Shown here piece by piece: positions 4,502 to 61,215 of a stretch of DNA of 64,000 bases. A program made the translations under genes and the position numbers. The DNA lies in the IMG/VR virus record IMGVR_UViG_3300028840_008160, positions 186,001 through 250,000 of that record; one strand, 5' to 3'. The stretch's first letter is position 1. Each line of letters opens with the position of its first letter. The notes beneath the pieces are model-generated. The model was not told the origin of the DNA. It ran no database searches and saw nothing but the letters and a program-made list of their open reading frames with translations.

Positions 4502-6412
4502 ATGATCGATAAAGAAGAATTAAGACAAAGATTATATAATACAGGTGAGAAGAAAGATTTTGTGCATTTGCATTTGCATAGTGATTTTTCTTTGAAAGAT
4601 GGCATCGGGAAACCAAATCAATATGCTAAAAAAGCAATTGCGCTTGGCATGCCGGCTTTGGCAATAACTGATCATGGTAGTATTGGTGCACATCCATCAT
4701 TTTTTATGTTTTGTAAGTCAAATGGTATTAAACCTATAGTTGGTGTTGAAGCATATTTGCAAGATCGACGTTATGAATATAAAGATGTTGAAGAGCAATT
4801 AAGTGATATTGATAAAAAAATTAAGTTGTTGAAACAAGCATTAAAGCATAAGAAATTAAATAAGCAGTTTGTGAACAAATATATTGAATATTATCGAAAA
4901 ATGTTGGATATGTCAGACGCTGAATTTGAAGATATTGATGCTTTAGATTTCAGTGAAGTAAAAGAATGTGTAAACAATACGTTACTTAAATTTCAACAGA
5001 TACAAAAAGATGTAGTTAATGAACGTGATAGTCTTAGAAAGAATCAGCATATTGTTTTATTGGCAAAAAATGAGCAAGGTCGTAAAAATATTACAAAAAT
5101 AGTTAGTGATGCTGCAAGGAATGGATTTTATTATAAGCCTAGAACATCATTTGATTTTGTTGCAGAAAATCATCACGGCATAATAGCAATGTCAGCTTGT
5201 CTTGGTGGCATTATTAATAATGTAATGTTACAATATGACAATGAAGCTGAAGCTGAAGCTGCAGGATTAGAAGTAGCAAAACAATACAAAGACGTTTTTG
5301 GCGATGATTTTTTTATTGAAATTATGATAATTGATATCGATCGTCAGAGACAAGCAAATACATTATTAGTCAAAATTGCTAAAAAACTTGGTATTAAGTT
5401 AGTCATTACAAATGATGTTCATTATTTAGATAAAGACGGAGCCCGGGCACAAGAAATATCTCTTATGCTTGGTTCAAAAGACGAAGTTGGACAGCAAGTT
5501 ACAATGCGAGATAAAAAGAGACAAGCAGCTATTAAAGAAATATTAGAAACTATTGGTAATGACAATTCTGCTGCTCACATTAAAAGAGTATACAACGATT
5601 ATATTGAATTAGACAGATTTGCTGAATTTAAACCGACAAAACAAAAGAATAAGTTATCAATCACATTGGACGAAATATCTGACATTGTTAGTGGTAAAGT
5701 TAAATTTAAACGTATATGGGAATTTTCTACAAAAGATTTTTGGTTTAAAGATCGACATGAGATGGTTGATGTTTATATAGATCAAGGGCATTACGAATAT
5801 TTAGATTCTGAAATTTTTGTTGAAGCATTAAATAACACGATTAAAGTAGCAAATATGATTGATGAATGGGAATGGGATACAAAAGAGAAATTGCCAAAAA
5901 TTGAGTTAGAAGAAGGTAAAAGCAGCTATGATTATATGGTCGAAATGGTTCGTGATGGGTGGCAACGAAAAGCTGAAGATAGTTGGTATGAAGAAAATAA
6001 TGTTTATGCGAAGCGCGTCAAATATGAATTGAGCGTAATACGACGAATTGATTTAGCAGACTATTTTGTTATTGTAGCAGATTACATTAAATTTGCAAAA
6101 AATCATAACATACTTGTTGGCGCAGGAAGAGGATGTTTTTTGCCTGAAGTTAATAAAGTAAAAATGGCTAATGGAACGCAGAAACAAATTGAACAAGTCA
6201 ACAGAGGTGATAAAGTTGCAAATAAGTTTTGGGGTGAGGCTAAAGTTGAAGAACATTTTGTATATGACATTGATGAAGATGTTGTAGAATTAACTTTTGA
6301 AAATAAAGTTATTATTTGTACTATGGATCATAGATTTTTTACTAGAAATAGAGGCGAAGTAAAGGCAATTGATTTAACAGAAGAAGATGAGATTTTATAT
6401 GAACTGGACTAA
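4502..6412 (+). CDS. dnaE: DNA polymerase III alpha, N-terminal piece (PHP domain) fused to an N-intein
   Basis: [50 protein letters not shown]; GAGRG is followed by intein block A (CFLPE) at 6134. Confidence 0.93.
6134..6409 (+). mobile_element. intein N-terminal fragment (92 aa) of a split intein
   Basis: starts with Cys after GAGRG; block [10 protein letters not shown]; ends [11 protein letters not shown] just before the stop. Confidence 0.85.
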
Positions 6413-7658
6413 ATTTAGAATTACCAGATATAAAAAGAAATTTCCCAATATTCCTGAAAATTTGCTAAATATATTAGTTGAATCTGCTGATAGATTTTTA
6501 ACAATTGATGAAGCACAATTATTTAAAAATCAAAACATTCAATCAAAACGAAAAATTAAATCTAATTGTGACATTTGTAAAGAGGATTTCACTATAGGTT
6601 TAACAAAATGGCTTAAACGAAAACATTCTGTTAGTATATGTCGAAAATGTTATGTTCCAAAGTTTGTTACAAAACAAAAAGACTGGTTAGACTCTCAATC
6701 TCGATGTCAAATTATAGCTCAAAATCGACAAGAGGTTAAAGTAAAAATGAGTGAATCTATTAAGAAAATGTGGAAAGAAAATCCTGAGAAATTAGAACAA
6801 ATGAGACAAAAAATAATTGAAAAAATCGATTCATCTTCTAACTATAGAGACGCAATATTAGGTTCTGATAATAAAGGCTTTATTCATTGTAGATTTGGAA
6901 AAATTAGATTTGATTCTTTGGCAGAATTAATGTTTATTATACAATGTGATAAGGACAATAAAATCGTAAGTTTAACAAGGTGGAATAAGCCTGGAATAAT
7001 TTATGAAGGGCAGACAAAAACAAAAAGATATTACCCTGATTTTGTAGTTGATGAAAAATTAATTGTAGATATAAAAAGCGGATTTGTTCAAAGTAAAGAT
7101 GAAAATTTAAACAATAAAATTCTAGCAACTAAAAATAATTATCCATTATTTGATGTTCAAATTATTAGTCCATCTATTTTGACAACATATAAATTTAGAA
7201 ATTTGATCAAATTGAATTATAATATTGAATTTTCGCATAAGTATAAACAGATTTTATATGAAAATGGTACTAAATTAGCCTCATCTTTTCAAAAAAAAAT
7301 CAGTGAAAAATCTGAATTTACTACATTAAAAAGTAAAAGAATAATACATTATAAAGGTCAAGTTCATGATCTTAAAGTGTCAACTCCAGATAGATCTTAT
7401 ATTGTGAATAACATAGTTGTTCATAATTCCGCTGCAGGCAGCCTTGTATGTTATCTTTTAGATATAACAAATGTCGATCCGATACAGCACGGGTTGTTGT
7501 TTGAGAGATTTTTGAGTATGTCTAGAAGTATGGCAATATATGATTTGTCAATTGATGACTTGTCAAGTGATGATGTTGAAGATGTAATAATTAATACAGA
7601 TAGTAAACAGTTTCATAATTGGTATGAGAATGAACGATTAATTAGGTTAGAAGAATGA
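6399..7658 (+). CDS. dnaE: putative homing endonuclease (PD-(D/E)xK type) + C-intein + short DnaE C-extein
   Basis: CDIC/CRKC zinc motif, NUMOD3-like [28 protein letters not shown] nuclease motif, VHDLKV...IVVHN intein end at 7427, then [29 protein letters not shown] (DnaE). Confidence 0.85.
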
Positions 7659-10636
7659 CAAAATTAGATTATATTCAGTTTCTTTGCGAAGAACGGTTGA
7701 CTAAACTTGGTTTACAAGATGACAAACGGTACATCCAACGGTTAGAACGAGAATTGACAAACATTGAAGTTCAAAATATACAAAATTATGTTTTGACTGC
7801 AGCTACAAAAGGCAAACACATAGACAGTCATGGTTCATTAGTTTATTTTTTACTTGGCATATCAAATAGTGATCCTATTCAAACAAACGAACCGCTTGTA
7901 ATAAAAAAGCAATCATCATTTCCTGATATTGATAGTGATTTTAGTATTAATGAAAGAGAACAAGTTGTCAAATATTTTATTGACAAATATGGTAGCGACC
8001 ATGTGGCGCCAATTGGTTCTTATGGTCAAATGAAAATGAAAATGGTTACACGAGATATTGCTCGAATTTTTGACATTGATTTAGATGACACAAATGAAGT
8101 TGTAAGAAATTTGCGAGATGATGTTGATGCTATGACAGAAGAAGAATTTGATGTCGCTATTGCAATAGAACCTGGTGAAGAAGGTTTTAGACAAGATTTA
8201 TACGATTTACGATTGTATTTTGATAGACATCCACAAGTTCGCGAAATCATATTTATGCTTAAGGGACAGCTTCGTCATTTAACAAAACATCCGGCTGGTG
8301 TTGTAGCTGTGCCGACAAAGATTGACGAAACAATACCATTAATGAGGCATAAAGACACATTGATTACTAGTTGGGTTGATGGTATTACAAGAAAAGATTT
8401 ACAATCATCAGGTTTTATTAAATTTGATATACTTGGTTTGAAAACTTTAACTATTATCAAAGAAATTTTAGAATTAATTCGATCAAGAGGCAAGTACAAT
8501 GCTAATGCTGATTTTGATTTGCAATCAATTGACAACGGACAGATGACATCTCAATTTTATGAAGACTTTTCAATACGATTACCACTTGATGGGAATAATG
8601 AAATATATGAACGATTTAGAAAAGCAGATACTAATGGTATATTTCAATTTGAATGTGTACACGGTGATACGTGGATCGGCAATTATAGAATGCGAGAACT
8701 ATATAATAAATTCGAAATAGATCCAGAATCAGTACATAAAATAGGTTGTTATAACTTTCAGAAAAAAACTAAAGTACGACAACAAATAGACGCGATGCAG
8801 AAAAAGCAAAAACGGTTATTTAGATTAGTTATTGAAGGTGACAGATGTATAGTTATTAGTTTCACGCATAGATTTTATACAAAGAATGGTTGGACGACGT
8901 TAGGTAGATTGACTACTAATGATAAAGTATTAATTGATCATGCAAGGTGTCGAACGCAATATTATTGCGATCAATCTGATACTATTGTTGATGGTTGGGG
9001 GACAGGGCCAAAATGTGCTCAGTGTATAAAAGAAAAACGACGTGTTTGTCCTTCGCAAGTTTTAGGAAAGTTTAAACGTCATTTTAAACATAGATATTCT
9101 TTTGTAAAAGTCAAATCAATAACTGATATTGGCATTCATGATGCATATGATATTGGATTTGATGTTAATAAGTTAAGACATAATTATGTTGCTAATGGAT
9201 TTATCGTTCATAATAGTGCTTTGATGAAATCATTGTTGAAAGAGATTAAGCCAACTGCATTTGCTGACATTACTTCTGCTACAGCATTAGGTCGCCCCGG
9301 TCCGCTTGATATGGGCATGCATCATGAGTATGCTGCTAGGAAAAATGGGAAACAATTTGATTTTGGTTCACCTCACATTGAAGCATGTTTAAAAGAAAGT
9401 TTTGGTATTCTAGTATATCAAGAAGATGTGATGAGATTGTGTCACATGGTTGCTGGGTTTCCATTAGATTTGACAGACACTGTTAGAAAAAATCTAATGA
9501 AGTCAATTCGCGATACTGATGCTAAAGATAAGGCTGCTAAGCAACGAAAAGAAATCACAGACATGTTTATTAAAGGCTGTATGGATAAAGGCCTTAGTCA
9601 AAAAGTTGCTGAATCTTGGTGGCAAAATTGTTGTTCTTTTGCACGTTATGGATTTAATAAATCTCATGCGGTAGCATATACAATTTTAAGTTATCAAATG
9701 ATGTGGTTTAAAGTTTATTATCCATTGGAGTTCTATGTAGTGTTATTTTCAAATTCACCAAAAGAAAAATTTACAAATTATTTTTCTGAGACTATGAATA
9801 AAGGCATAAGCATCGTTCCTGTCGACATTAGGTTAGCTAATGAAGGATTTTCAATACATGGTGAAGATAGCATTATGTTTGGATTAAGTCATATCATGGG
9901 CGTTGGACCGTCTGTTGTTAAGATAATATTAGATGCACAACCGTTTAATTCATTCGATGAATTTTGGGCTAGAACTGCTAGTGTTAAAAAGGTTGGGAAA
10001 GCAGCAATGTTGGCGCTAATTAACGCACATGCGTTTGACGCATTTGGGCCACAAAATGAAATATTAGAACGATATTTTCTTCATTTTAGACATGAGAAAA
10101 AATGGTCTAGAGATGTTGATTATGACAATAAACAATTTGAGCATGAGAAATTTATTGAAGCATATAGTCTTGATTGGCGTACGAAATTATCAGAAGCTCA
10201 AAAAGCAATATTGAAAAGTTTGAATGCGAAATTGTTAACAAGATTAGTAAATCCAACTGTTAATATGCGGCGCAATGTATGGGGTGTTGTAACAGATATT
10301 ACATTAAAAACTAGTAAAAATGGTAATCGTTATTATTATGTGTTTTTGACCGATTCAAGATTTAATATTGTGAAAATACGTATACCGTGTTACAATAGAC
10401 GATGTAAAAAAGCGTTTATGTTGAATCAGTCAACTGGAAAATACACAAAAGTTAATATTGATGATGTAATAAAGTTGAGCAACATATTAACTGGTCAAGC
10501 AGAAACAAGCGAGTATATGGGCCGAATATTTATTGATTTATACGATGTTTGTTGTATTGGTAATATATATGAAAAGTCAGTCCAACAAAAAGAACGATTA
10601 GCAAAATACGAGAAAGTTTTAAGTGAAGAACAATAA
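7655..10636 (+). CDS. dnaE: DNA polymerase III alpha, catalytic piece, containing a mini-intein
   Basis: [66 protein letters not shown]-terminal OB fold. Confidence 0.95.
8654..9214 (+). mobile_element. cis mini-intein (187 aa) at the DnaE FQFE/S site, with a Cys-rich insert and no LAGLIDADG domain
   Basis: FQFE|CVHGDT ... THRFYT ... [17 protein letters not shown]|SALMK. Confidence 0.9.
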
Positions 10637-11337: not shown

Positions 11338-12648
11338 ATGCCACACGAAGACAATCCTTGGGCAAAAGAAGCTGAGGAAAATCAGTCAAGACAGAGGCAG
11401 TCTGACATCAACAACATGACATGGAAGCCTGGCGAGCATACAATTCGTATATTGCCGGCAAAGAAAAAAGGTGGTATGCCATTTGCCAAGTATATTGTAC
11501 ATTGGATACCTGTTAAAACGGCAAAAAATGACCGCCCTATTGTTCATGCTGTTGATTACAAATGTCCTGTTTGTGAATTTGTTGGCGAATTGTGGAGTGA
11601 GATTTATCGGCTTAAAGAAGAAGAGGAGATGACAGACAAGTCGCCTGAAGTTCAAAAACTTGTTAAACAGGCATCAAAACTTCGCGGGAAGAAAACGTAT
11701 GATATGAATGTCATACATCGCGATGATGCTAGAACTGATTCTGGTAAGATAAAAGTTAAGAGACTAGTTGCTGGTCCAACAATTTGGAAAGCTATTATTG
11801 AACTAGGTAATAGCGAAAAGTGGGGTAATCCATCTTCTGCTGGTAAGAGAGGTTATGATTTAACAGTAACAGTTGATGGTGAAGGATTAAAGAGAGAATA
11901 TACAATTCTTCCTGATCCAGATCGAAAGCCATTAACAGATGATGAGCTTGAAGCAGTGGAATCTGCATATGATCTGGAAAAATTGCGGAAGTTTTCTACT
12001 GCAAAGGATATTTTAGACATTTTGAAGAGTGCTAAAGCGCCGCTTGATTCAGTTGATCTGCAGAAAGTTAAAAAGTCTTTATCTGTTGATTTTGAAAAAT
12101 CAACTAATAATAGCGATGATGACGACGATACTACAGAATCAACTGATGCACCTAGCCATGATGACGACGATGATGATAATGATGTCGCTGCTCCTTCTAA
12201 TGATGATAGCGATGATGATAATGACGGTAGCAGCGATGATGATAATGACGGTAGCAGCGATGATGATAATGATAGCGACGATGACGATGATGAAGAAGAT
12301 CAGAAGAAAAACAAACAAAACAAGAAAGAAGCAGCTGCGTTTTCGTCAAGTGATGATTCAGGCGACGATTCAGATGATGATGGATTAACTGCTATGGATT
12401 GTCGCGGGACATATGATGGCGAAGATATAGGTTGTCAGGAATGTGATTATGTAGGTGATTGTAAGCGATTACAAAAAGATTTTGCTAGCAAAGCTAAAGA
12501 GCTAGATATTGATATTGATGGTATGAATGGTGAAGCAATTGAAAAGGCAATTAAAGCAAAGGAAGCTAGCAAAAAATCAGGTAAAGCCGGCAAAGTTGGT
12601 AAAGCTGGCAAAGAAAATTCAGGAAAGAAACGTGATTTACCATTCTAA
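11338..12648 (+). CDS. gp32-like single-stranded DNA-binding protein with long acidic tail
   Basis: IRILP, VHW, CPVCE, GYDLTVTVDGEGLKREYTI motifs; Asp-rich region; ends DLPF. Confidence 0.82.
   Translation: MPHEDNPWAKEAEENQSRQRQSDINNMTWKPGEHTIRILPAKKKGGMPFAKYIVHWIPVKTAKNDRPIVHAVDYKCPVCEFVGELWSEIYRLKEEEEMTDKSPEVQKLVKQASKLRGKKTYDMNVIHRDDARTDSGKIKVKRLVAGPTIWKAIIELGNSEKWGNPSSAGKRGYDLTVTVDGEGLKREYTILPDPDRKPLTDDELEAVESAYDLEKLRKFSTAKDILDILKSAKAPLDSVDLQKVKKSLSVDFEKSTNNSDDDDDTTESTDAPSHDDDDDDNDVAAPSNDDSDDDNDGSSDDDNDGSSDDDNDSDDDDDEEDQKKNKQNKKEAAAFSSSDDSGDDSDDDGLTAMDCRGTYDGEDIGCQECDYVGDCKRLQKDFASKAKELDIDIDGMNGEAIEKAIKAKEASKKSGKAGKVGKAGKENSGKKRDLPF
12208..12272 (+). repeat. 24-nt tandem repeat (about 2.7 copies) encoding SDDDNDGS
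   Basis: agcgatgatgataatgacggtagc twice plus a partial copy. Confidence 0.85.
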
Positions 12649-12707: not shown

Positions 12708-14093
12708 ATGAGCAAAGGTGAAGAAAAAGCAAAAGAACGCGGGTCAGCAATTGTGACTGCAGCATCGTTGATTCAGAAGAAATTTGGTCGATCAATTGAA
12801 CCTGCAGGAGATAAATTCAATAGTATCGTGAAATCAATATCTTCTGGTTCAATGCTATTAGACAATGCAATTGGCGAATGTAAAGGTTATCCTGTTGGTT
12901 CAGTTATTGAGGTATTTGGATGGGAAGGCGCAGGAAAGACATTAATGCTTTATTTAGCTTATGCTGAAGCACAACGTCTTTATCCAGATCAACCATGTGT
13001 TTTGATTGATGCAGAACGACAATTTCAATTTCAAGCTAAATGGGCTGAAAAAGTCGGTGTTGATGTATCAAAATTGATTGTTTTACCTTGTTCAACTGCT
13101 GAAGAAGCGTTTGACATGATACACGCATTAATTTTAGGTAAGCATGAAGTTGATAAAAAAACTGGTGAAGTTATCAAAGTTATTGAGCCTGGTCGTTATG
13201 CGATTATTGGTGTTGATAGTGTAACACAATTGGTGTCAATAACTGATGCGTCAAAAGGTATGGAAGAATCTAGACAACGAGGAACTCAAGCTACGGCAAT
13301 TGGTTTAGGACTTAAGAAAGTCTCGTCTGCTATGGCTAGATCTGATGTTGATTCAAAAACAATATTGTTTTTTATTAATCAATTACGCAAAAATCCAAAT
13401 GCGATGTTTGGAAATCCAGAATATCGCACTGGCGGCAATGCACTACCATTTTATGACACAATTGCTTTTAAAGTAGCAAAGATATGGAAATCAGAAGAAC
13501 GTGATGATAATGGCGACATTATTTCGCATGGCGTAAAAATCACGTTTGAAAAAAACAAAGCTGGATCATTACCAGAAAATGCAATAACATTTACGTTGAT
13601 GCATGATGGCACTGGTGTTAACAATGAGCAAGAGTTCTTTGATGTTGCACTTATAAATGGTGTGATAAAAGAATTTGAAATCGTTGGCAAACGGGATAAA
13701 GTTGCTACACGATATAATTTCTTTGACCCAAACACTGGTGAAAAATTAGATGATAGTATTAAAGATTTTGCCAAACGATCATTTTATAAGATATTAGAAC
13801 AACATCCAGAAATTGAAGAACAACTTAAAGAACTTATAGCTGAACGAAAAATATTCGTACAAAAAGATTCTGTTGAAGAATATATTCCTGATTCAGCTGT
13901 TAAAGAACCAGATGATAATGAGGATGATGAAGAAGAAAATAATGACAAAAATCAGACTAGTGATCAGTCAGATGATGATAATCAGAATGATGAAGGTGCA
14001 TTTAGCGATGACGAACAATCTTCTGAAAGACGATCAAAAAGAAAGATCGGTCGAAAAGGTAAATTGGGACGAAAGAAATTAAAAATGAGATGA
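12708..14093 (+). CDS. recA: RecA/UvsX recombinase with acidic-basic tail
   Basis: ISSGSMLLD, EVFGWEGAGKT, LIDAE, VDSV, FINQLR, GNPEYRTGGNALPFY, KNK. Confidence 0.95.
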   Translation: MSKGEEKAKERGSAIVTAASLIQKKFGRSIEPAGDKFNSIVKSISSGSMLLDNAIGECKGYPVGSVIEVFGWEGAGKTLMLYLAYAEAQRLYPDQPCVLIDAERQFQFQAKWAEKVGVDVSKLIVLPCSTAEEAFDMIHALILGKHEVDKKTGEVIKVIEPGRYAIIGVDSVTQLVSITDASKGMEESRQRGTQATAIGLGLKKVSSAMARSDVDSKTILFFINQLRKNPNAMFGNPEYRTGGNALPFYDTIAFKVAKIWKSEERDDNGDIISHGVKITFEKNKAGSLPENAITFTLMHDGTGVNNEQEFFDVALINGVIKEFEIVGKRDKVATRYNFFDPNTGEKLDDSIKDFAKRSFYKILEQHPEIEEQLKELIAERKIFVQKDSVEEYIPDSAVKEPDDNEDDEEENNDKNQTSDQSDDDNQNDEGAFSDDEQSSERRSKRKIGRKGKLGRKKLKMR

Positions 14094-14691
14094 TTGCCAA
14101 CGCACAACAGATTGTTGATGATTCAAGTCGAGTAAAAATTGTTTTTGGCAGACGCAGATCTGGCAAGACGACAGTTATACAACAATGCCTTAGACAATTT
14201 AAAAATGAATGTGTTGTTGTTGTCCCATATGAAAGTGCGAAAAACGTATATCGAATTCAAGGTTTAAGCACAAACGCAATTATATCTGTGCGCGAGTTTC
14301 TAGATATAGATTCTCGTCAAATAGGAATACAAATTTTCTGTTTGACGAGTTTTTATTGTATAATAACATTGAAGACTTGACTTTTAATCATTTGTTTGAT
14401 ACGATTGTATTAACAGGGACACCGGATAGTCAAGTTTTATTTAATAAAGACTACGCAAATAATTTAAACTTTTTAAAGTCGTTTATTAAACGACTTGATG
14501 GCACAGTATCTTTATTTGAATTGACAAATGGCGCGTTAATTGACGGCGAAGAAGAAATATATGAAACTATTTTGAGAGATATTGATGATACTGTATATGA
14601 AGCGACGTATACTAATCATAACGGAATTGCTTTTACAAAATTTGAATTGATTTTAGGAGATGACAATGAACAAATTAATAATGGGAATTGA
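14090..14691 (+). pseudogene. P-loop NTPase split by an apparent -1 frameshift (ORFs 14090-14380 and 14356-14691)
   Basis: Walker A GRRRSGKT in the first frame; Walker B-like FLFDEF and IVLTGTP in the second frame, which is open upstream of 14356. Confidence 0.6.
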
Positions 14692-49933: not shown

Positions 49934-51379
49934 ATGGCTACAAGATTCAAAGAACGAAAAGTTAAGCCGGGTGACAAAGATTATGATCCACAGCAATGTG
50001 GATTTACAGAAACTAAGAAGTTCAAGGTTCTTCATTGTAGTAATGTCGAAGGCAATAACAATAAATTTTATTGCATTGAATTGCAGTATAATCCATCAAC
50101 AAGTTGTTATAGACTATTCTCTCATTATGGTCGACTCGTAACATCTGAAGTGTTTGGCATTCGTGATTACGATTATATTTCAAATGGGACAATTAAAGAT
50201 TCATCTTATCTTGAGACTGAAATGGATTCAATTGTTAAGAAGAAACTTCGTGGCAAAACCATTAAAGATAAAGATACAAATCAAGAGTGGCGGGAAAACT
50301 ACGAAGAAGTTGAAACATTTGCACCAACAGTTGGATCTTCAAACATTCGCGGAAAATCAAGTACTGTTACAACTAAAACAGCTGTGATTGACACATCGAC
50401 TATATCTAACAAGAAAATTATTCGTATTATTGACCAAGTTGTGAATGAAAATATTCACAATATTACGTCTGTAACAACACTAACACTGACATCTAATGGT
50501 TTTGAAACTCCACTTGGTCCTGTAACAAAAGAACATGTACAACGAGCAAGAACAGCATTAGATTCCATGAAGGCTGAATTGAAAGACGATAAGCTTAGTA
50601 GTTCATCGTCGGCTGTGATTAAAGGTAATAATTTATACTATTCATTAATTCCGCACGAGTTTGGCCGAAAGATTACTGAAGCTGATTGGATTCTTGATTC
50701 TGCAAAACTTATTGAAGAATATGATTTGCTTGATCAGCTTGAGTCTGCTGTTCAAATGGGTGCTGCGCTTAATCAAAGTGCTTCGCAACGAATGAATGCG
50801 CTTGGTATTGATTTTGATGAACTTACTGATGATCAGGAATTTAAACGTTTAGAAAATTATGTTCATCAATCAAAAGCGTCAAACCATCGAAGTTTAGATG
50901 TTTGGGGTTGGAAAGTTAAGAATATCTTCACTGTAAAAATACCTAAAGAAAGACAACGTTTCGAACCAGTGGCAAAACGACTTGGTAATGTTAAAGAACT
51001 TTTTCATGGTTCTCGAAATTGTAATATTCTAAGTATTTTGTCGAATGGATTAATTATTCCTCCATGTCATGCTGGTCATGTAACTGGTCGATTGTATGGC
51101 AATGGAATTTATGGTGCACATCACAGTACTAAATCGTTAAATTATTCAACTGGTTGGTGGTCAGGATCGCGAAATAAATATGACAATGCTTTTCTGTTTG
51201 TTGTCAAATTTGCAATGGGTAACACTTATATAGTAAAACATCATAGTGGCGGACCGCCTCGTGGTTATGATAGTTTATGGGCAAAATCAAGTCCTGGTGG
51301 TTTATATAATGATGAATATATTGTTTATACATTACCACAAGCGACAATAACTCATTTGATTGAAATGGCAAAAAGATGA
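49934..51379 (+). CDS. WGR-domain PARP-like ADP-ribosyltransferase
   Basis: NNNKFY.IEL...LFSHYGR (WGR); NLYYSLIPH regulatory helix; LFHGS...SIL..GL, GRLYGNGIY.A...KSLNY, LYNDEYIVY (H-Y-E triad). Confidence 0.9.
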   Translation: MATRFKERKVKPGDKDYDPQQCGFTETKKFKVLHCSNVEGNNNKFYCIELQYNPSTSCYRLFSHYGRLVTSEVFGIRDYDYISNGTIKDSSYLETEMDSIVKKKLRGKTIKDKDTNQEWRENYEEVETFAPTVGSSNIRGKSSTVTTKTAVIDTSTISNKKIIRIIDQVVNENIHNITSVTTLTLTSNGFETPLGPVTKEHVQRARTALDSMKAELKDDKLSSSSSAVIKGNNLYYSLIPHEFGRKITEADWILDSAKLIEEYDLLDQLESAVQMGAALNQSASQRMNALGIDFDELTDDQEFKRLENYVHQSKASNHRSLDVWGWKVKNIFTVKIPKERQRFEPVAKRLGNVKELFHGSRNCNILSILSNGLIIPPCHAGHVTGRLYGNGIYGAHHSTKSLNYSTGWWSGSRNKYDNAFLFVVKFAMGNTYIVKHHSGGPPRGYDSLWAKSSPGGLYNDEYIVYTLPQATITHLIEMAKR

Positions 51380-55738: not shown

Positions 55739-56869
55739 ATGTTACAGAAAAAAGTTGCTAGCACACTAGTAAATGTGCTCGACACACCAAGAATGCAAAC
55801 CATTCTTGACAAATCACAACCTATACAACCTGTTATTGATGAATTGACAAGTCATTGGAGTTATGATTTGTATTCAAGGAAACCTGGGGCTGCTTATACA
55901 AACGACGGTATTTTTGTTGGTACTGATCTTGATCTTGCTTGTTTTCTTTTTGCTTTGGCTGAACGCGGCGCAGTCATTAACATTCCAAAATATACAAGTC
56001 GTCGACCAAAGCAAGTGACTGAGGGCGAAATTATTACTTCAGCAGACAATCGTCACGGTAAAATTCTTAGCGTTTTGGCTAATAAAGAAAATTCTTCTTT
56101 TTCAATTCGCATTAATGATGCAAATGTTATGACGACAGATTCTGTCGGTAATTTCCGAAATTTTATGCTTGTTGATGTTGACGGTACATGGTATGATGGT
56201 TGGGCTACAATTGAGTTTATACCGGATGCCAAAGAGAATGATTTTTTGAAGAACAACAATCTTTGGTCAGGCAATTCTGTAGTTTTTAAGAATTTTATTC
56301 ATCCTAATCGGTGGATTTCGTTTTTTGGTCAACATTATTTTGCAACCAAAGTGTTGCTTGATCGACTTACTGATGAAGCCAAATTTCTCAAAGATGTTGC
56401 TAAAATTATGAGAGAACGAGGAATTAAAATTGGTGGCAATGGTGTAGAAAAAAAACAATGGCCAAAGAAAACTGTTGTCGGAGAACAGCAGAGCATTAAA
56501 GTAGATGTGATTGAAGCTGAAGTCGAGTATCCTGCATTTACAGGTGATTATCCTAATCCTGTTAGTCCAATGTTGCCACAATATTCAGGATCAAGTGATT
56601 CAGAATTATTGAAAGCTGTGGAAGATCGTTCAAGATCGCTGACATATTCAATCATTCCTAAGTTACGGTTTGCTACTCGTGCAACTGAATTTGCTTTTAT
56701 GAAGCATGGCGACAAGGGATTAAAGATGCCGTCGTGGATTGAAAATTCACGATGGGATCGATTATATGTGCAAAAGGGCAAAAAGAAAGTATGGAGTAGA
56801 ATGGTTTTTACAAGAGGAATTGCTCTTCGATATCGCGTATTTCAGAAGAGTGAGATTGTAGCAAAATGA
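55739..56869 (+). CDS. hypothetical protein
   Basis: 376-aa ORF; GAGGAG RBS. Confidence 0.7.
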   Translation: MLQKKVASTLVNVLDTPRMQTILDKSQPIQPVIDELTSHWSYDLYSRKPGAAYTNDGIFVGTDLDLACFLFALAERGAVINIPKYTSRRPKQVTEGEIITSADNRHGKILSVLANKENSSFSIRINDANVMTTDSVGNFRNFMLVDVDGTWYDGWATIEFIPDAKENDFLKNNNLWSGNSVVFKNFIHPNRWISFFGQHYFATKVLLDRLTDEAKFLKDVAKIMRERGIKIGGNGVEKKQWPKKTVVGEQQSIKVDVIEAEVEYPAFTGDYPNPVSPMLPQYSGSSDSELLKAVEDRSRSLTYSIIPKLRFATRATEFAFMKHGDKGLKMPSWIENSRWDRLYVQKGKKKVWSRMVFTRGIALRYRVFQKSEIVAK

Positions 56870-57306
56870 ATCAACAATCTGATGACAAGAGCTCTGCGAC
56901 ATATTTCGCAGAGCTCTTAACTGGCACAAATGTTGATAAAGCGAGCGAATTATATAAGGCTCGTTTTTGTGCAATGCTGTCTTTAGTTAATTTTCGTTTG
57001 ATTCATAATTTGTTAAAGACTAAGTTTAGAGACACATCGCACGAAGAGGAGGTAAATACATTACCTAAGTTAATTGTTGACGTGTGGAAAGAAAGTGAAA
57101 TTGAATTATTGCGAACTGAGTTTGAAGAATATTCTAAACATATGGATTCAGCTTTGGGTCAATTGTTTAAAGGTTTGACAGGCTCACCAGATGATGTTAT
57201 GAAAAAACGTATTGCAAAGATAGTTGATGTTGCTAACATAATAACTGAATCATTAACAAAATCAAGCGGGTTTACTTTTGAGAAAAAAGATGAATCAAAA
57301 CAGTGA
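56866..57306 (+). CDS. hypothetical protein
   Basis: ATGA coupling. Confidence 0.6.
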   Translation: MNQQSDDKSSATYFAELLTGTNVDKASELYKARFCAMLSLVNFRLIHNLLKTKFRDTSHEEEVNTLPKLIVDVWKESEIELLRTEFEEYSKHMDSALGQLFKGLTGSPDDVMKKRIAKIVDVANIITESLTKSSGFTFEKKDESKQ

Positions 57307-57505
57307 TATTAAAGTGACTAGTGATCCTGATGACGACAGCGTTTTGCATGTTTCATTTACACTAAGACCAAATTATTCCATTAAAGGAAAAATGGGATTT
57401 CTTACTAAGAATGGTTCATTTATGTCTATGGACATGTTGCGAAAGTCTATTGAAAAAACTAAAAGTGCGGATCAAATTTTTTCAATTGGGACGAAATTAG
57501 AATGA
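57278..57505 (+). CDS. hypothetical protein
   Basis: 75-aa ORF. Confidence 0.5.
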   Translation: MRKKMNQNSDIKVTSDPDDDSVLHVSFTLRPNYSIKGKMGFLTKNGSFMSMDMLRKSIEKTKSADQIFSIGTKLE

Positions 57506-57645
57506 TTTTAGTTACTGGTGTGGCAGGTTTTATTGGCTATCATGTGGCTAAGGAATTACTAGAGCAGAGTAGAGAGCTAGTACTCTCGTACGCGGGCCCA
57601 GATTGCAGACTGTCTACGCTTGCAAACTTTCAGCCTAGGCCCTAA
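57502..57645 (+). pseudogene. N-terminal fragment of an NAD-dependent epimerase/dehydratase, truncated
   Basis: MILVTGVAGFIGYHVAKELLE is the TGxxGFIG Rossmann start; ATGA-coupled to the upstream gene; similarity stops where the GC-rich island begins and a stop follows after 47 codons. Confidence 0.8.
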
Positions 57646-57843
57646 CAAACTGCTTACTTGCTCTTGCTGAGTCTGCAGTCTATTGTCTCTATCGTCAGCA
57701 TATAGCTTATGCCGACTGTCTCAACAGCTGGCGCACTAACTGCCCTACAATAGCCGCCCTCTAGTCAGCGTGTAAGAGAGGATAGGGTGCCACTTAACAG
57801 CATATGTTCAATGACATCGACAGTATTACTCTGAGTGGACACT
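57561..57843 (-). ncRNA. GC-rich non-coding island, candidate structured RNA or foreign insert
   Basis: about 49% GC (138/280 by hand count) against an AT-rich background; several stems that gain G-U pairs on the minus strand; possible pseudoknot. Confidence 0.45.
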
Positions 57844-58557
57844 TTAGAACGCTGATGCCGGTTTGATATCTAAGTATCTTTCAAGATGTATTGGTTCATT
57901 AAGATTTTCTACATGCACATCTGCGTAAACAGTAAACTCACCCCATACTACTAAATCTAGTTTAAAATTTTCGTCTTTGTTTGTCATCTCTCTGACTGGT
58001 GGTTTGAACGTTTCATGTAAATGATATACGACTTTAGTGATTTTGCTGTATGTATCTTGGTCGTGAGCTAATGTTTCTATTCGAATTCTAAAATGTCTGC
58101 GGCGGTTTACTATACGTTCAAACGCTGAATAATGTGTCAAGTATATTAGTTTTGAATAACGTTCTATAAGTTCTTGCGTCAACTGTTTTTGGGATGCCTG
58201 TGGTAGTATTGATTGATTTGTTTTTTCTACAATTGTTGGTTTACCAATTACGATTTTTGGTGGGCTTTTAGGATTTGATTTGACAGGTGCATCTGTGACT
58301 TCTAATTGTTGTTCTATTTCTTTAACTTCGTCTTTGATTTTTGTAATAGTTGTGTCTTTAGCATCTAGATTTGGAATTTCACCAAGTTCAAAATATTGAC
58401 CGATTTTAACGTTACTACCCATTAGAATTCTTTGTTTTAATGCATCAAGAACATCTTTTGACAACAATATCAGAATTACGATAAATATTGGCCAAATAAG
58501 TTTGCTAATTAAAGGAAGTATCAATTCCCACGTTTTTGTTTTTTCAGTCGGTAACAT
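57844..58557 (-). CDS. membrane-anchored prokaryotic YEATS (pYEATS) domain protein
   Basis: N-terminal LIWP hydrophobic helix; I.KV.YHLH.TF..P.R....F.L...WGEF...A.V...LERYL. Confidence 0.75.
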   Translation of the reverse strand: MLPTEKTKTWELILPLISKLIWPIFIVILILLSKDVLDALKQRILMGSNVKIGQYFELGEIPNLDAKDTTITKIKDEVKEIEQQLEVTDAPVKSNPKSPPKIVIGKPTIVEKTNQSILPQASQKQLTQELIERYSKLIYLTHYSAFERIVNRRRHFRIRIETLAHDQDTYSKITKVVYHLHETFKPPVREMTNKDENFKLDLVVWGEFTVYADVHVENLNEPIHLERYLDIKPASAF

Positions 58558-58744
58558 TAATAGCCTTCTTTTTTAATAACGATTTATGATATGCTAATAA
58601 TGATTTGCGTGTTGATTTGATGTGCTTCCGCCAATTGCAACTTGATCGCAAACAAACTTTTGCTAATCCTTTAGTTTGACCGTTGTAGCATAGTATTGAT
58701 TTGTGCAATCCAAGACGACATAATAAATTTTTCATTACGACCAC
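58544..58744 (-). CDS. small hypothetical protein
   Basis: LLCRLGLH...C...C motif. Confidence 0.5.
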   Translation of the reverse strand: MVVMKNLLCRLGLHKSILCYNGQTKGLAKVCLRSSCNWRKHIKSTRKSLLAYHKSLLKKKAINVTD

Positions 58745-60135
58745 CTAACAATAATTTCTTGTTTTGCTAATTGCATATCATTTGCGTGCATATAAATTTC
58801 ATAAGGTGGATAACCAGTCCATGGAGTAGTTATACCATTTGCTTCTACAGTGACATTGGACAATGTCGGCGGTATATACACGTTTGTCGGTGCTGCGATT
58901 GGTAAACTGTCGTATGTCAATGTAAATTTTTTGCCGATTATGCCCCATACAGGATTTGCTCCGGATATGTTTCTTGGATATACACGAACTAATTTGTCTA
59001 TAACTGGTTTGGGATTACCGCTATCATCTAACATACCATAAGTATTATACGACGATTTATCATAACTCCAATAACACCAACCAACTTTATATTTATCTGC
59101 TAAATCACAAAAATCATTTACATAATTTAAATATCCTGGCACATCTGGTGGTGCGCCAAATTCACCGAAGACTAATGGAACGCCGTAAGATTTTGCTTCG
59201 TCAACTTTGATTTTTATAGCTTGTTCCATGATACTTCTATTATACCATTTGTATGGTCTGCCTTCATGTACTAAGGCGTCATAATAATGTGGAAAATATA
59301 TTGCTCTGTTGTTTTGTGGTGCAAATTTTAGAAAACTTGGTATTCCAGAACTTGTTGATATCCACGGTTCAAAAAACATATTAGAATATAATGAACTGTT
59401 AAGTAGTCTAGCCCACATATCTTTATAAAAATTTGTTAACACTTTACTTTCAAATGCTGTCGTTAAACCCGGAAAAGGTTCATTCATTACATCAAAACCA
59501 ACTAATGTTGGTGGTTGATTTGGCAATGAAGCTTCGATTCTATTCATTGTGTATTCGACAGCATTCAAGTATTGTGTTTTGCGCGAACTGCTTTTCCAAA
59601 AATTTGTAAATGCTGTAAGCACTGCTGGTTGTAAATAATTTCGACTCCAAGGCTCCCATGCTGGCGTAATAAAGTTAACAGTTTGATATACATCACCAAT
59701 AAAAGGAATCGTAATTTTAACTCTTTGATCAATTGACCAATCAGGAAAACCGTTTCCTGTAAAACGTTCTGCCATTAAATCTTGATGAAAGTCGACTATT
59801 GAATAAATTCCTGCATTTCTTAATAAGTTAAGATCAGTTATAACCTGATCAATGTATGCGTTATTGTAATTACCTGCTGTTGGTTCTATTTCACTCCAAA
59901 ATACTAGGTACCTGACAAGGCTAAACCCCCAGCTTCTAAGTTTTAAAATATCTAGAACTTCGGGCCACATTTCATGTCCTGGTGAATGTTTTTGATAATT
60001 TGAAATATTAACACCATGAAATATGAAGATTCTGTTATGTGAATCATAAATATAGTTAGTATCAGATATTACAGGCGGTTCATAATTTTGTTTTATATAG
60101 TTGATCATTTGAATTAAATATCTACTTATAGCCAT
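58735..60135 (-). CDS. glycoside hydrolase family 5, endoglycoceramidase-like
   Basis: R.FIFHGVNIS, VRY...WS.IEP..G.Y...Y, VDFHQD, GFPDW, GFDVMNEP (acid/base), PHYYD, VFGEFG (nucleophile), LVRVYP. Confidence 0.88.
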   Translation of the reverse strand: MAISRYLIQMINYIKQNYEPPVISDTNYIYDSHNRIFIFHGVNISNYQKHSPGHEMWPEVLDILKLRSWGFSLVRYLVFWSEIEPTAGNYNNAYIDQVITDLNLLRNAGIYSIVDFHQDLMAERFTGNGFPDWSIDQRVKITIPFIGDVYQTVNFITPAWEPWSRNYLQPAVLTAFTNFWKSSSRKTQYLNAVEYTMNRIEASLPNQPPTLVGFDVMNEPFPGLTTAFESKVLTNFYKDMWARLLNSSLYSNMFFEPWISTSSGIPSFLKFAPQNNRAIYFPHYYDALVHEGRPYKWYNRSIMEQAIKIKVDEAKSYGVPLVFGEFGAPPDVPGYLNYVNDFCDLADKYKVGWCYWSYDKSSYNTYGMLDDSGNPKPVIDKLVRVYPRNISGANPVWGIIGKKFTLTYDSLPIAAPTNVYIPPTLSNVTVEANGITTPWTGYPPYEIYMHANDMQLAKQEIIVRWS

Positions 60136-60216
60136 GTAGTCCTCCAATTTTTTTGACGTGTATAGTTACTGTGTTTATCAAAAATTGATAACACATGTAT
60201 AATTTAAGGAGGATAC

Positions 60217-60732: not shown

Positions 60733-61215
60733 ATGTTGAAGTATCTTGCAGCTATTCAAGCTGAATTTCTTAAACTCGCCCGAAAATGGGATGATTTATC
60801 GTATGAGCAGCAAAGAGGTTATTTATCTCGTCATCCTCGTACGAAACGCCGAGTTACTGCAATGCCACCTCGAAGATCGCCAACTAGTGGATTAAGGGTG
60901 GAAGATCCACATAGAGGTCAATCTAGAGATATTTTAGGTATGCTTCGTGATGTCACTAATGCAGCTTCACAAACACCCGTATGGCGCAAATACGTGACTG
61001 TAAGAAATGATCGCAATAACAAATATCATTATTTTGGCGTTTTTGAAAATAAAGATGGCGGATTTACTGCAGCTAATGTGTATGGTCGTATTGGTTATCC
61101 TCCAAGAGGCGCTGTTGTTTTAGCCACAGCAGCAAAACCTGACGGTGCAATAAGAGCTGCTGAAGCTAAACTTGCTAAGAAAATGCAAAAAGGATATGTG
61201 CCGACAAAACTCTAG
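60733..61215 (+). CDS. WGR-domain protein with shared N-terminal leader
   Basis: MLKYLAAIQAEFLKLA; NNKYHY...YGRIG...A....KL.KK..KGY (WGR). Confidence 0.75.
   Translation: MLKYLAAIQAEFLKLARKWDDLSYEQQRGYLSRHPRTKRRVTAMPPRRSPTSGLRVEDPHRGQSRDILGMLRDVTNAASQTPVWRKYVTVRNDRNNKYHYFGVFENKDGGFTAANVYGRIGYPPRGAVVLATAAKPDGAIRAAEAKLAKKMQKGYVPTKL

What the first reader, a model, noticed from the sequence alone, without database searches (positions are those of the whole stretch)
57502..57846. ~285-nt GC-rich, possibly pseudoknotted non-coding island where an epimerase gene breaks off
Seen: at about 57561 the sequence jumps to ~49% GC (138/280 by hand count) and loses the A/T runs typical of this genome. This happens just as an epimerase ORF (MILVTGVAGFIG..., 57502) loses similarity, and the island ends flush with the stop codon of the convergent pYEATS gene (57844). 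Potential stems (plus-strand coordinates): 57572-77/57582-87; 57604-11/57670-77 (8 bp perfect); 57594-601/57635-42, which crosses the previous stem and would form a pseudoknot; 57694-702/57708-16 (9 bp); 57743-48/57782-87 enclosing 57758-62/57777-81; and 57787-94/57834-42. Four of these gain a G-U pair only on the minus strand, favouring a minus-strand RNA downstream of pYEATS. Inference: an unannotated structured RNA or an RNA-guided/mobile element remnant (pseudoknot plus 3' hairpin loosely recalls omega-RNA architecture, but no IscB/TnpB is present). It could also be foreign or artefactual sequence. I could not match it to tmRNA, RNase P, group I/II introns or tRNA.
Basis: partly seen in the sequence, partly recalled or inferred. 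Interest (0 to 1): 0.85.

Follow-up and report, generated by a model that had tools for sequence, protein, structure and literature searches.

The report
Orphan GC-rich filler in dead epimerase gene
The GC-rich patch is real, but it is most likely about 215 bases of orphan DNA that replaced the middle of a sugar-epimerase gene in an uncultivated giant phage, leaving a dead gene rather than a demonstrable structured RNA.

Summary
The compositional island is real. At 49% GC it is the most GC-rich 283-nt stretch of a 33.5% GC window, and it is the only GC-rich non-coding gap. It is not an assembly artefact: three separate public assemblies carry it base for base.

A related phage, whose flanking protein is 86% identical, has an intact 319-aa NAD-dependent epimerase at this spot. 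In the window only three pieces of that locus remain:
- codons 1-27 of the epimerase (57502-57582);
- a previously unnoticed, out-of-frame C-terminal remnant of about 16 codons (57798-57847), in which the conserved Trp codon is now TGA;
- about 215 nt of unrelated 51% GC DNA between them (57583-57797), which stands where about 825 nt of gene used to be.

The structured-RNA reading is not supported. Rfam gives no hit even at E<=10. The plus strand folds no better than shuffles. The minus strand reaches z about -2 to -2.4, but 15% of random segments of the same genome do as well. Internal repeats are at chance level. No homolog exists in any collection searched, so covariation cannot be tested. 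There is no promoter or terminator signal, and the nearest pYEATS relative lacks the element.

Best reading: a deletion-plus-filler scar in a variable accessory locus. The origin of the filler is unknown. Interest is low.

The parts
57278..57505 (+). Upstream 75-aa ORF, the last intact gene of the plus-strand operon. Its TGA stop overlaps the ATG of the epimerase stub (ATGA).
   Evidence: A homologous ORF of 74 aa precedes the intact epimerase in relative L005.
57502..57582 (+). 5' remnant of an NAD-dependent nucleotide-sugar epimerase gene: codons 1-27, including the GxxGxxG Rossmann motif. The open frame runs on into the filler and stops at 57645, giving a 47-aa stub.
   Evidence: Pfam PF01370 residues 2-28, E 2e-5. 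PHROG 540 nucleotide-sugar epimerase. tblastn with the L005 epimerase: aa 1-27, 70% identity, and nothing beyond.
57583..57797 (.). Orphan GC-rich filler of about 215 nt (50.9% GC measured over 57586-57797). It stands where codons 28 to about 302 (about 825 nt) of the epimerase lie in relatives. It has stops of mixed type in all six frames.
   Evidence: No similarity to the epimerase, to the rest of the window, or to related loci. No match in the phage, plasmid or E. coli collections. Every exact island word matched only this phage in IMG/VR and in JGI metagenomes; a looser two-motif pattern gave three chance matches that do not extend. The one GTDB hit is a 21-mer chance match. No Pfam hit above cut-off on translated pieces. 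No relative of the longest 47-aa piece among 1.84 billion proteins. Stop codons.
57798..57847 (+). 3' remnant of the epimerase, about 16 codons reading LTAYVQ*HRQYYSEWTL*. It is out of frame with the 5' remnant (offset +2). The conserved Trp codon is TGA at 57812-57814, and the frame ends at TAG 57845-57847, overlapping the pYEATS stop.
   Evidence: Aligns with the C-termini of the intact relatives: L005 ...LAAYVKWHKEYFN... and L008 ...FVQWYMSYY.... At the DNA level 15 of 18 bases match L005 at 57801-57818. Local score 41 against 29.3 +/- 3.9 for shuffles (p about 0.017), and the match sits at the colinear position.
57594..57753 (-). Three consecutive predicted minus-strand hairpins: 57753-57689, 57684-57644 and 57642-57594. 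They account for most of the minus-strand folding energy. They are predictions only.
   Evidence: The ad hoc sub-window 57590-57730 on the minus strand gives z -3.9, but the scan-corrected comparison with genome background is not significant.
57844..58557 (-). Convergent pYEATS-domain gene (237 aa), intact to its native stop. It is not part of the island.
   Evidence: Pfam PF20305 pYEATS, E 1e-18. The C-terminus ...RYLDIKPASAF matches L005 ...RYLDIKPAAAY.

Best explanation
The island is a gene wreck, not a device.

An accessory nucleotide-sugar epimerase gene of this roughly 330-kb uncultivated phage lost its central ~825 nt. In their place it now carries ~215 nt of unrelated, roughly 51% GC DNA of unknown and probably foreign origin. 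This is a deletion-plus-filler or illegitimate-recombination event in a locus that varies from phage to phage.

Shown:
- The 5' 27 codons and the 3' ~16 codons of the gene survive.
- They are out of frame with each other, and the 3' piece carries a nonsense codon.
- Relatives have the intact gene at the same place.
- The filler has no detectable relative, no coding capacity and no significant structure.

Inferred:
- The 47-aa stub is probably still translated, by ATGA coupling to the upstream ORF.
- The filler is probably transcribed only as the 3' tail of the two convergent operons.
- It has no function of its own. At most, its GC-rich hairpins incidentally stabilise the 3' end of the pYEATS transcript or separate convergent transcription.
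- Its high GC content suggests a recent arrival that has not yet drifted towards the genome's AT-rich composition.
For: - Intact 319-aa epimerase between the same neighbours in L005 (86% identical flanking protein) and in L008.
- DNA homology with L005 runs up to 57551 and resumes at 57857. Protein homology covers aa 1-27 only.
- The C-terminal remnant has Trp changed to TGA and a frame offset.
- There is no second epimerase in the window.
- The locus is a variable hotspot. L006 and L009 carry other cargo there, including a NUMOD3/TnsA-like endonuclease gene in L009. The RlaP gene found in three relatives is cleanly absent from the window.
- The island is identical in the IMG/VR contig, in JGI contig Ga0180438_10000088 and in a Logan assembly of SRR6963591.
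- There is no Rfam hit at E<=10 in the island and none at gathering score anywhere in the window, and no tRNA or tmRNA.
- Fold z-scores lie within the genome background.
- There is no excess of promoter-like sites and no terminator.
- No homolog was found anywhere.
Against: - A GC-rich, long non-coding stretch in an AT-rich genome is the classic signature used to find structured RNAs (GC-IGR approach, PMC6429828). Neutral DNA would be expected to drift towards AT.
- The minus strand folds somewhat better than shuffles: z -2.0 to -2.4, and -3.9 for one ad hoc sub-window.
- The composition is odd for natural DNA. The four bases are nearly equal, and identical neighbouring bases make up only 15% of dinucleotides, against 25% expected (p about 5e-5). 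That is lower than any 283-nt window in four natural 40-46% GC loci.
- No donor for the filler was found.
- All available copies are identical, so neither selection nor decay can be measured.
Confidence: 0.65

Rival explanations
1. An orphan structured non-coding RNA is encoded on the minus strand. It would consist of three or four hairpins, possibly pseudoknotted. It would be made as the 3' extension of the pYEATS transcript or from its own promoter, and it would have been acquired at the expense of the epimerase.
For: - The island is the most GC-rich stretch and the only GC-rich non-coding gap in a 33.5% GC window.
- Folding is strand-asymmetric: minus z -2.43 against plus +0.68.
- The sub-window 57590-57730 on the minus strand gives z -3.9.
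- G-U pairs favour the minus strand.
- The GC-IGR rationale applies (PMC6429828).
Against: - There is no Rfam match even at E<=10.
- The z-score is not exceptional once sub-window and strand choice are allowed for: 14.6% of random genome segments do as well.
- Inverted repeats are at chance level.
- There is no terminator and no excess of promoters.
- The element is single-copy and has no homolog in any collection searched, so covariation is untestable.
- The nearest pYEATS relative has no such element.
- In the GC-IGR scheme it would be filed as 'unnamed: insufficient evidence'.
Confidence: 0.12
2. The filler is the remnant of a mobile genetic element that disrupted the epimerase. Candidates are the 5' part of an ORF-less group I intron, a MITE/PATE-like IS200/IS605 derivative, or the repair scar of a homing-endonuclease cut. 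A later deletion would have removed the rest of the gene.
For: - The break lies in a conserved N-terminal region of a conserved enzyme.
- A relative carries a NUMOD3/TnsA-like endonuclease gene in the same hotspot.
- The genome carries other selfish elements: there are intein-like signals in a fragmented DnaE.
- The composition is foreign.
Against: - There is no hit to group I or group II intron, ribozyme or HEARO models.
- The plus strand, which is the intron sense, is unstructured: z +0.7 and 0.0.
- There are no terminal inverted repeats or target-site duplication.
- There is no second copy in the window or, for the four exact island words scanned in IMG/VR, in the 330-kb contig or any other viral contig. 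The motif-pair pattern added only chance matches.
- There is no transposase, TnpB or IscB next to it.
Confidence: 0.15
3. The island is an assembly chimera or an artificial or contaminant insert.
For: - The composition is near-uniform and looks random.
- The boundaries with the flanking sequence are sharp.
- Several 6-bp palindromes are present: 7 by my own reading, against about 4 expected. This is not significant.
Against: - The sequence and both junctions are identical in three assemblies made by different pipelines: IMG/VR contig 329.8 kb, JGI Ga0180438 contig 190 kb, Logan SRR6963591 contig 76 kb.
- Seven contigs carry the same neighbourhood.
- There is no match to plasmid or vector-like records or to E. 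coli.
- The flanking gene remnants are colinear with relatives.
Confidence: 0.02
4. The filler is a DNA-level cis element, such as a set of protein-binding sites, a recombination site or a packaging site. GTCT/AGAC-type motifs are reused in it.
For: - GTCT occurs 5 times, and TGCAGACTGTCT and TGCCGACTGTCT are repeated 106 nt apart.
Against: - After correction for the number of possible words and pairs, these repeats are at chance level (direct-repeat p=0.06).
- A motif-pair scan of IMG/VR gave only chance matches without extension.
- Relatives lack the element.
Confidence: 0.04

Closest known systems
Gene remnants and indel scars in the variable accessory ('moron' or hotspot) regions of phage genomes
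   Same: Conserved neighbours flank a slot whose content differs between relatives. Here that content is an intact epimerase, HD/RlaP genes, an endonuclease, or this wreck. Both ends of the gene are retained, out of frame and with a nonsense codon, as in ordinary pseudogenes.
   Different: The missing gene body is not simply deleted. It is replaced by ~215 nt of much more GC-rich, homopolymer-poor DNA with no identifiable donor.
GC-rich intergenic regions of AT-rich genomes, as used to discover structured ncRNAs (GC-IGR/DIMPL pipeline; Stav et al. 2019, PMC6429828)
   Same: It is a long, GC-rich non-coding stretch in an AT-rich genome. That is exactly the selection criterion of that approach.
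   Different: That approach requires homologs and a consensus with covariation before a motif is named. This sequence has none and would fall into their 'unnamed: insufficient evidence' class. It also lies inside a broken gene rather than in a true intergenic region.
Omega-RNA / reRNA of IscB and TnpB (OMEGA systems, IS200/IS605)
   Same: There is only a loose resemblance: a couple of hundred nucleotides with hairpins and a possible pseudoknot.
   Different: There is no adjacent IscB/TnpB gene, no IS end, no hit to the HEARO model, and no other copies.
ORF-less group I introns in phage genes
   Same: It is a GC-richer insert of 200-300 nt that interrupts a conserved enzyme gene in a large phage.
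   Different: The two 'exons' add up to only about 43 codons and are out of frame. The sense strand shows no structure, and there is no Rfam Intron_gpI signal.

Membership tests
NAD-dependent epimerase/dehydratase (Pfam PF01370, extended SDR) | N-terminal Rossmann GxxGxxG nucleotide-binding motif | tested here: met
   The stub begins MILVTGVAGFIG and matches profile positions 1-27. It is 70% identical to L005 residues 1-27.
NAD-dependent epimerase/dehydratase (Pfam PF01370, extended SDR) | Full-length catalytic domain with the Ser/Tyr-x3-Lys active site (about 300 aa) | tested here: not met
   The ORF stops after 47 aa. No frame of 57583-57797 resembles the epimerase. Only a ~16-codon C-terminal remnant follows. 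It is therefore a pseudogene, not a functional member.
Any curated RNA family (Rfam 15) | Covariance-model match | tested here: not met
   There is no match in the island at E<=10 on either strand, and none at gathering score in the whole window. ARAGORN finds no tRNA or tmRNA.
Structured ncRNA (generic) | Folding energy beyond composition-matched controls and beyond genome background | tested here: inconclusive
   Minus strand z -2.43 and -2.03; plus strand +0.68 and +0.02. Of the random genome segments, 14.6% reach the island's best sub-window z-score.
Structured ncRNA (generic) | Homologs with compensatory base changes | not testable with these tools
   Only identical copies of the same phage were found. 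No diverged homolog turned up in any collection.
Omega-RNA / OMEGA (IscB, TnpB) | Encoded next to, or overlapping the end of, an IscB/TnpB nuclease gene within an IS200/IS605-type element | tested here: not met
   The neighbours are a 75-aa ORF, the epimerase stub and a pYEATS protein. There is no HEARO hit.
Group I intron | Conserved core fold on the sense strand, and exons that join into an intact ORF | tested here: not met
   There is no Intron_gpI hit at E<=10. The plus strand has z +0.68 and +0.02. The flanking remnants total about 43 codons, are out of frame and contain a TGA.
MITE / PATE-type non-autonomous element | Terminal or subterminal inverted repeats and multiple copies | tested here: not met
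   There are no terminal inverted repeats. There is no other copy in the window. Four exact island words are single-copy in IMG/VR, including the 330-kb source contig, and the motif-pair pattern found no further copy, only chance matches.
Intrinsic terminator between convergent operons | GC-rich hairpin followed by a U-run | tested here: not met
   There are 0 terminator-like sites in 56500-59000, and the island has no T-run of 4 or more.

The most novel reading that the evidence does not exclude
The ~215-nt filler is a lineage-specific, single-copy structured RNA gene on the minus strand, just downstream of the pYEATS gene. It would belong to a class not yet represented in Rfam or in any public assembly searched, and its capture cost the phage an epimerase. 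Alternatively, the near-equal base composition and the lack of homopolymers could mark DNA made by an unusual, weakly templated synthesis or repair process.
Probability: 0.1. Interest if true: 0.55.

Novelty: already known. Interest (0 to 1): 0.2.

Why it matters
Mostly as a caution. In AT-rich phage genomes a sharp GC-rich, hairpin-rich island is not automatically a structured RNA. Comparison with one related contig showed this one to be the filled-in wreck of an accessory gene.

It also documents gene turnover at a variable slot of an uncultivated ~330-kb phage: an epimerase was lost, RlaP is absent, and relatives carry different cargo there.

If the filler did turn out to be expressed and structured, it would be an orphan phage RNA. 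Nothing measured here argues for that beyond its composition.

Tried and rejected
- **Known RNA families.** I ran an Rfam E-value scan of 57000-58400 and a gathering scan of the whole window. The island gave nothing. The only two hits at E<=10 were weak matches (E 1.9 and 6.4) outside it. ARAGORN found nothing.
- **Recoded or read-through ORF.** Stops of all three kinds occur in all six frames.
- **Decayed foreign protein gene.**
  - Pfam on eight stop-free pieces gave only a sub-threshold zf-RING_16 match (22.3 bits against a cut-off of 27.4), which I take as chance from Cys/His spacing.
  - phmmer of the longest 47-aa piece against 1.84 billion proteins gave 0 hits.
- **Decayed epimerase body.** tblastn, blastn and local alignments with shuffle controls found nothing except the two terminal remnants.
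- **Second copy, DGR-like template or tandem repeats.** A sensitive blastn against the rest of the window, the repeat finder, TRF and self-alignment against shuffles all stayed at chance level.
- **Homologs and donor.**
  - The phage, plasmid and E. coli BLAST collections gave no match.
  - Four exact island words scanned in IMG/VR matched only this phage's own contig.
  - The motif-pair scan added three chance matches that do not extend.
  - One JGI metagenome scan found only the same phage.
  - One GTDB scan gave a 21-mer hit in Shewanella surugensis that does not extend and is a chance match.
- **Operator-planted or assembly artefact.** Rejected: the window is identical to the public contig and to two other assemblies.
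- **Restriction-site or palindrome enrichment and GTCT enrichment.** Neither is significant after multiple-testing considerations. This is my own count.
- **Related hairpin family.** The strong hairpin at 56887-56918 is not repeated elsewhere in the window.

Full report
**1. Observation**

The window is positions 180001-244000 of the public contig IMGVR_UViG_3300028840_008160 (329.8 kb) and is identical to it. It is AT-rich, at 33.5% GC.

The stretch 57561-57843 is 49.1% GC, with almost equal amounts of the four bases (A71 C75 G64 T73). It has no A or T run of four or more, where about six are expected. The highest-GC 283-nt window of the whole 64 kb lies here, at 57511-57793 with GC 0.498. 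The window mean is 0.335 and the sd 0.033. Among non-coding gaps of 120 nt or more, this is the only GC-rich one. So the compositional island is real and extreme.

The ORF starting at 57502 matches the NAD-dependent epimerase family only over residues 2-28. The convergent gene at 57844-58557 is a pYEATS-domain protein.

**2. Not an artefact**

The same sequence, including both junctions, is present without a single difference in two further assemblies:
- a Logan assembly of SRR6963591 (L004, 13.1 kb compared);
- JGI contig Ga0180438_10000088 (L010, 1.9 kb compared).

Seven contigs carry the same gene neighbourhood. The flanking proteins are recorded from JGI, Logan and ENA sources.

**3. What relatives have at this place**

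The conserved 376-aa protein just upstream (55739-56869) has many relatives.
- The closest is 86% identical (L005). There the same 143-aa and 74-aa ORFs are followed by an intact 319-aa epimerase, whose 3' end overlaps the stop of the convergent pYEATS gene by 23 nt.
- L008 also has an intact epimerase, of 336 aa.
- L006 and L009 carry different cargo in the slot: HD/response-regulator and RlaP genes in L006, and a NUMOD3/TnsA-like endonuclease plus RlaP in L009.
- RlaP, which sits next to pYEATS in three relatives, is cleanly absent from the window.

This is therefore a variable accessory locus.

**4. Anatomy of the wreck**

DNA similarity to L005 runs up to 57551 and resumes at 57857. Protein similarity covers epimerase residues 1-27, at 57502-57582.

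In another frame (offset +2), 57798-57847 reads LTAYVQ*HRQYYSEWTL*. This aligns with the C-termini of the intact relatives: L005 has LAAYVKWHKEYFN and L008 has FVQWYMSYY. The conserved Trp codon is changed to TGA. At the DNA level, 15 of 18 bases match L005 at 57801-57818. The local score is 41, against 29.3 +/- 3.9 for shuffles, and the match lies exactly where colinearity predicts.

So about 215 nt (57583-57797; 50.9% GC) stand in for about 825 nt of gene. The pYEATS gene itself is intact to its native C-terminus.

**5. Is the filler an RNA?**

- Rfam gives nothing in the island on either strand, even at E<=10. Nothing in the whole window reaches a gathering score. There is no tRNA or tmRNA.
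- The plus strand folds like its shuffles: z +0.68 for the island and +0.02 for the core.
- The minus strand folds somewhat better: z -2.43 (4 of 200 shuffles) for the island and -2.03 (8 of 200) for the core.
- One ad hoc sub-window, 57590-57730 on the minus strand, reaches z -3.9.
- I applied the same scan (five 141-nt sub-windows on both strands) to 48 random 283-nt segments of the same window. Seven of them (14.6%) had a minimum at least as low as the island's -2.99.
- Several places in the genome fold far better. Examples are 56887-56918 (z -7.2) and 14230-14490 (z -4.1).
- The best internal inverted and direct repeats are at chance level (p 0.22 and 0.06). TRF finds nothing.
- There are no terminator-like sites, and promoter-like sites are no more frequent than in shuffles.
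They are still what a 283-nt, 49% GC sequence gives by chance.
- The pseudoknot could not be scored with the tools available.

**6. Is it coding, or a known mobile element?**

All six frames have stops of mixed types. Pfam on the stop-free pieces gives nothing above cut-off. The longest piece, 47 aa on the minus strand, has no relative among 1.84 billion representative proteins. There are no terminal inverted repeats and no second copy in the window. No transposase, TnpB, IscB or reverse transcriptase gene lies next to it.

**7. Homolog search**

- There is no match in the phage, plasmid or E. coli collections or in any fetched related locus.
- In IMG/VR, four exact island words are single-copy and match only this contig. 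The motif-pair pattern added three chance matches that do not extend.
- The JGI metagenome scan returned only the same phage.
- The one GTDB hit is a bare 21-mer in Shewanella that does not extend.

Covariation therefore cannot be tested.

**8. Interpretation**

The simplest account of all the results is a deletion-plus-filler event, by illegitimate recombination or capture of foreign DNA, that killed an accessory epimerase gene in a hotspot where gene content turns over.

The following points are inferred, not shown:
- The ATGA overlap with the upstream ORF suggests that the 47-aa stub is still translated.
- The filler is presumably transcribed only as the tail of the two convergent operons.
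- Its GC-rich minus-strand hairpins could incidentally protect the pYEATS mRNA 3' end.

Two things remain unexplained. The first is the donor. The second is the peculiar composition: near-equal bases, and identical neighbouring bases at 15% against 25% expected (p about 5e-5). That is lower than any window of four natural 40-46% GC loci. The only lower value in this window is a GAT-repeat acidic tract. High GC in an AT-rich genome argues either for recent arrival or for constraint. Because all copies are identical, the two cannot be separated here.

**9. Comparison with known kinds**

- It works like an ordinary phage pseudogene or indel scar.
- It meets the selection criterion of the GC-IGR approach for ncRNA discovery (PMC6429828) but none of that approach's confirmation criteria. 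It would be filed there as 'unnamed'.
- It fails the defining features of omega-RNA (no nuclease partner), of group I introns (no sense-strand fold, no restorable ORF), of MITE/PATE elements (no terminal repeats, single copy) and of intrinsic terminators.

**10. Verdict**

The structured or pseudoknotted RNA interpretation is not supported.

My confidence is about 0.65 for a non-functional scar with orphan filler, about 0.15 for a remnant of a mobile element, about 0.12 for an orphan ncRNA, and 0.02 for an artefact. Interest is low, at 0.2.

Noticed in passing
window 56887-56918: A 13-bp perfect GC-rich hairpin (AAGAGCUCUGCGA / 6-nt loop / UCGCAGAGCUCUU) lies inside the first ~18 codons of the 146-aa ORF. 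It has z -7.2, with 0 of 200 shuffles as stable. The same palindrome is present in relative L005 (~7154-7189). It is not repeated elsewhere in the window. It could be a processing, attenuation or protein-binding site.
   Followed up: partly
window 14230-14490 (+): A strongly structured stretch (z -4.1, 0 of 200 shuffles) lies between two overlapping short ORFs (14090-14380 and 14356-14691), downstream of the RecA-like gene. It includes a terminator-like hairpin followed by a U-run near 14312-14350. There is no Rfam hit.
   Followed up: partly
window 4502-10636 (+): The DNA polymerase III alpha (DnaE) gene is spread over three consecutive ORFs: 4502-6412, 6387-7658 and 7655-10636. There are sub-threshold intein-splicing and PD-(D/E)XK signals in the second and third. 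The gene appears fragmented or invaded by inteins.
   Followed up: no
window 58558-58569, compared with L005 9523-10484: An RlaP (PF10127) gene sits between pYEATS and the GH5 cellulase gene in relatives L005, L006 and L009. It is cleanly absent from this phage. This is a second gene-content difference in the same accessory region.
   Followed up: partly
window 57561-57843: Identical neighbouring bases (AA, CC, GG, TT) make up only 15.2% of dinucleotides, against 24.8 +/- 2.6% for shuffles (p about 5e-5), while CT/AG, GC and TA are enriched. No 283-nt window of four natural 40-46% GC loci is this low. The cause is unexplained.
   Followed up: partly
window 12100-12310 (within ORF 11338-12648): A long acidic low-complexity tract (runs of D, SDD and NDD encoded by GAT/GAC repeats) lies in a 436-aa protein with no Pfam hit. 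It is the only place in the window with an even lower homodinucleotide fraction than the island.
   Followed up: no
window 49934-51379, 58735-60147, 60733-61215: The neighbourhood holds unusual accessory genes for a phage: a PARP-like protein with PARP_reg and WGR signals, a GH5 cellulase-family glycosidase, and a small WGR-domain protein. Further upstream are NrdD, RecA, SbcC, a CCA-adding enzyme and RNase Y homologs.
   Followed up: no
window 57639-57761 (+), 41-aa stop-free piece: There is a sub-threshold Pfam match to zf-RING_16 (22.3 bits, cut-off 27.4; E 1e-4 for that one protein). I take it as chance Cys/His spacing in a non-coding frame.
   Followed up: no
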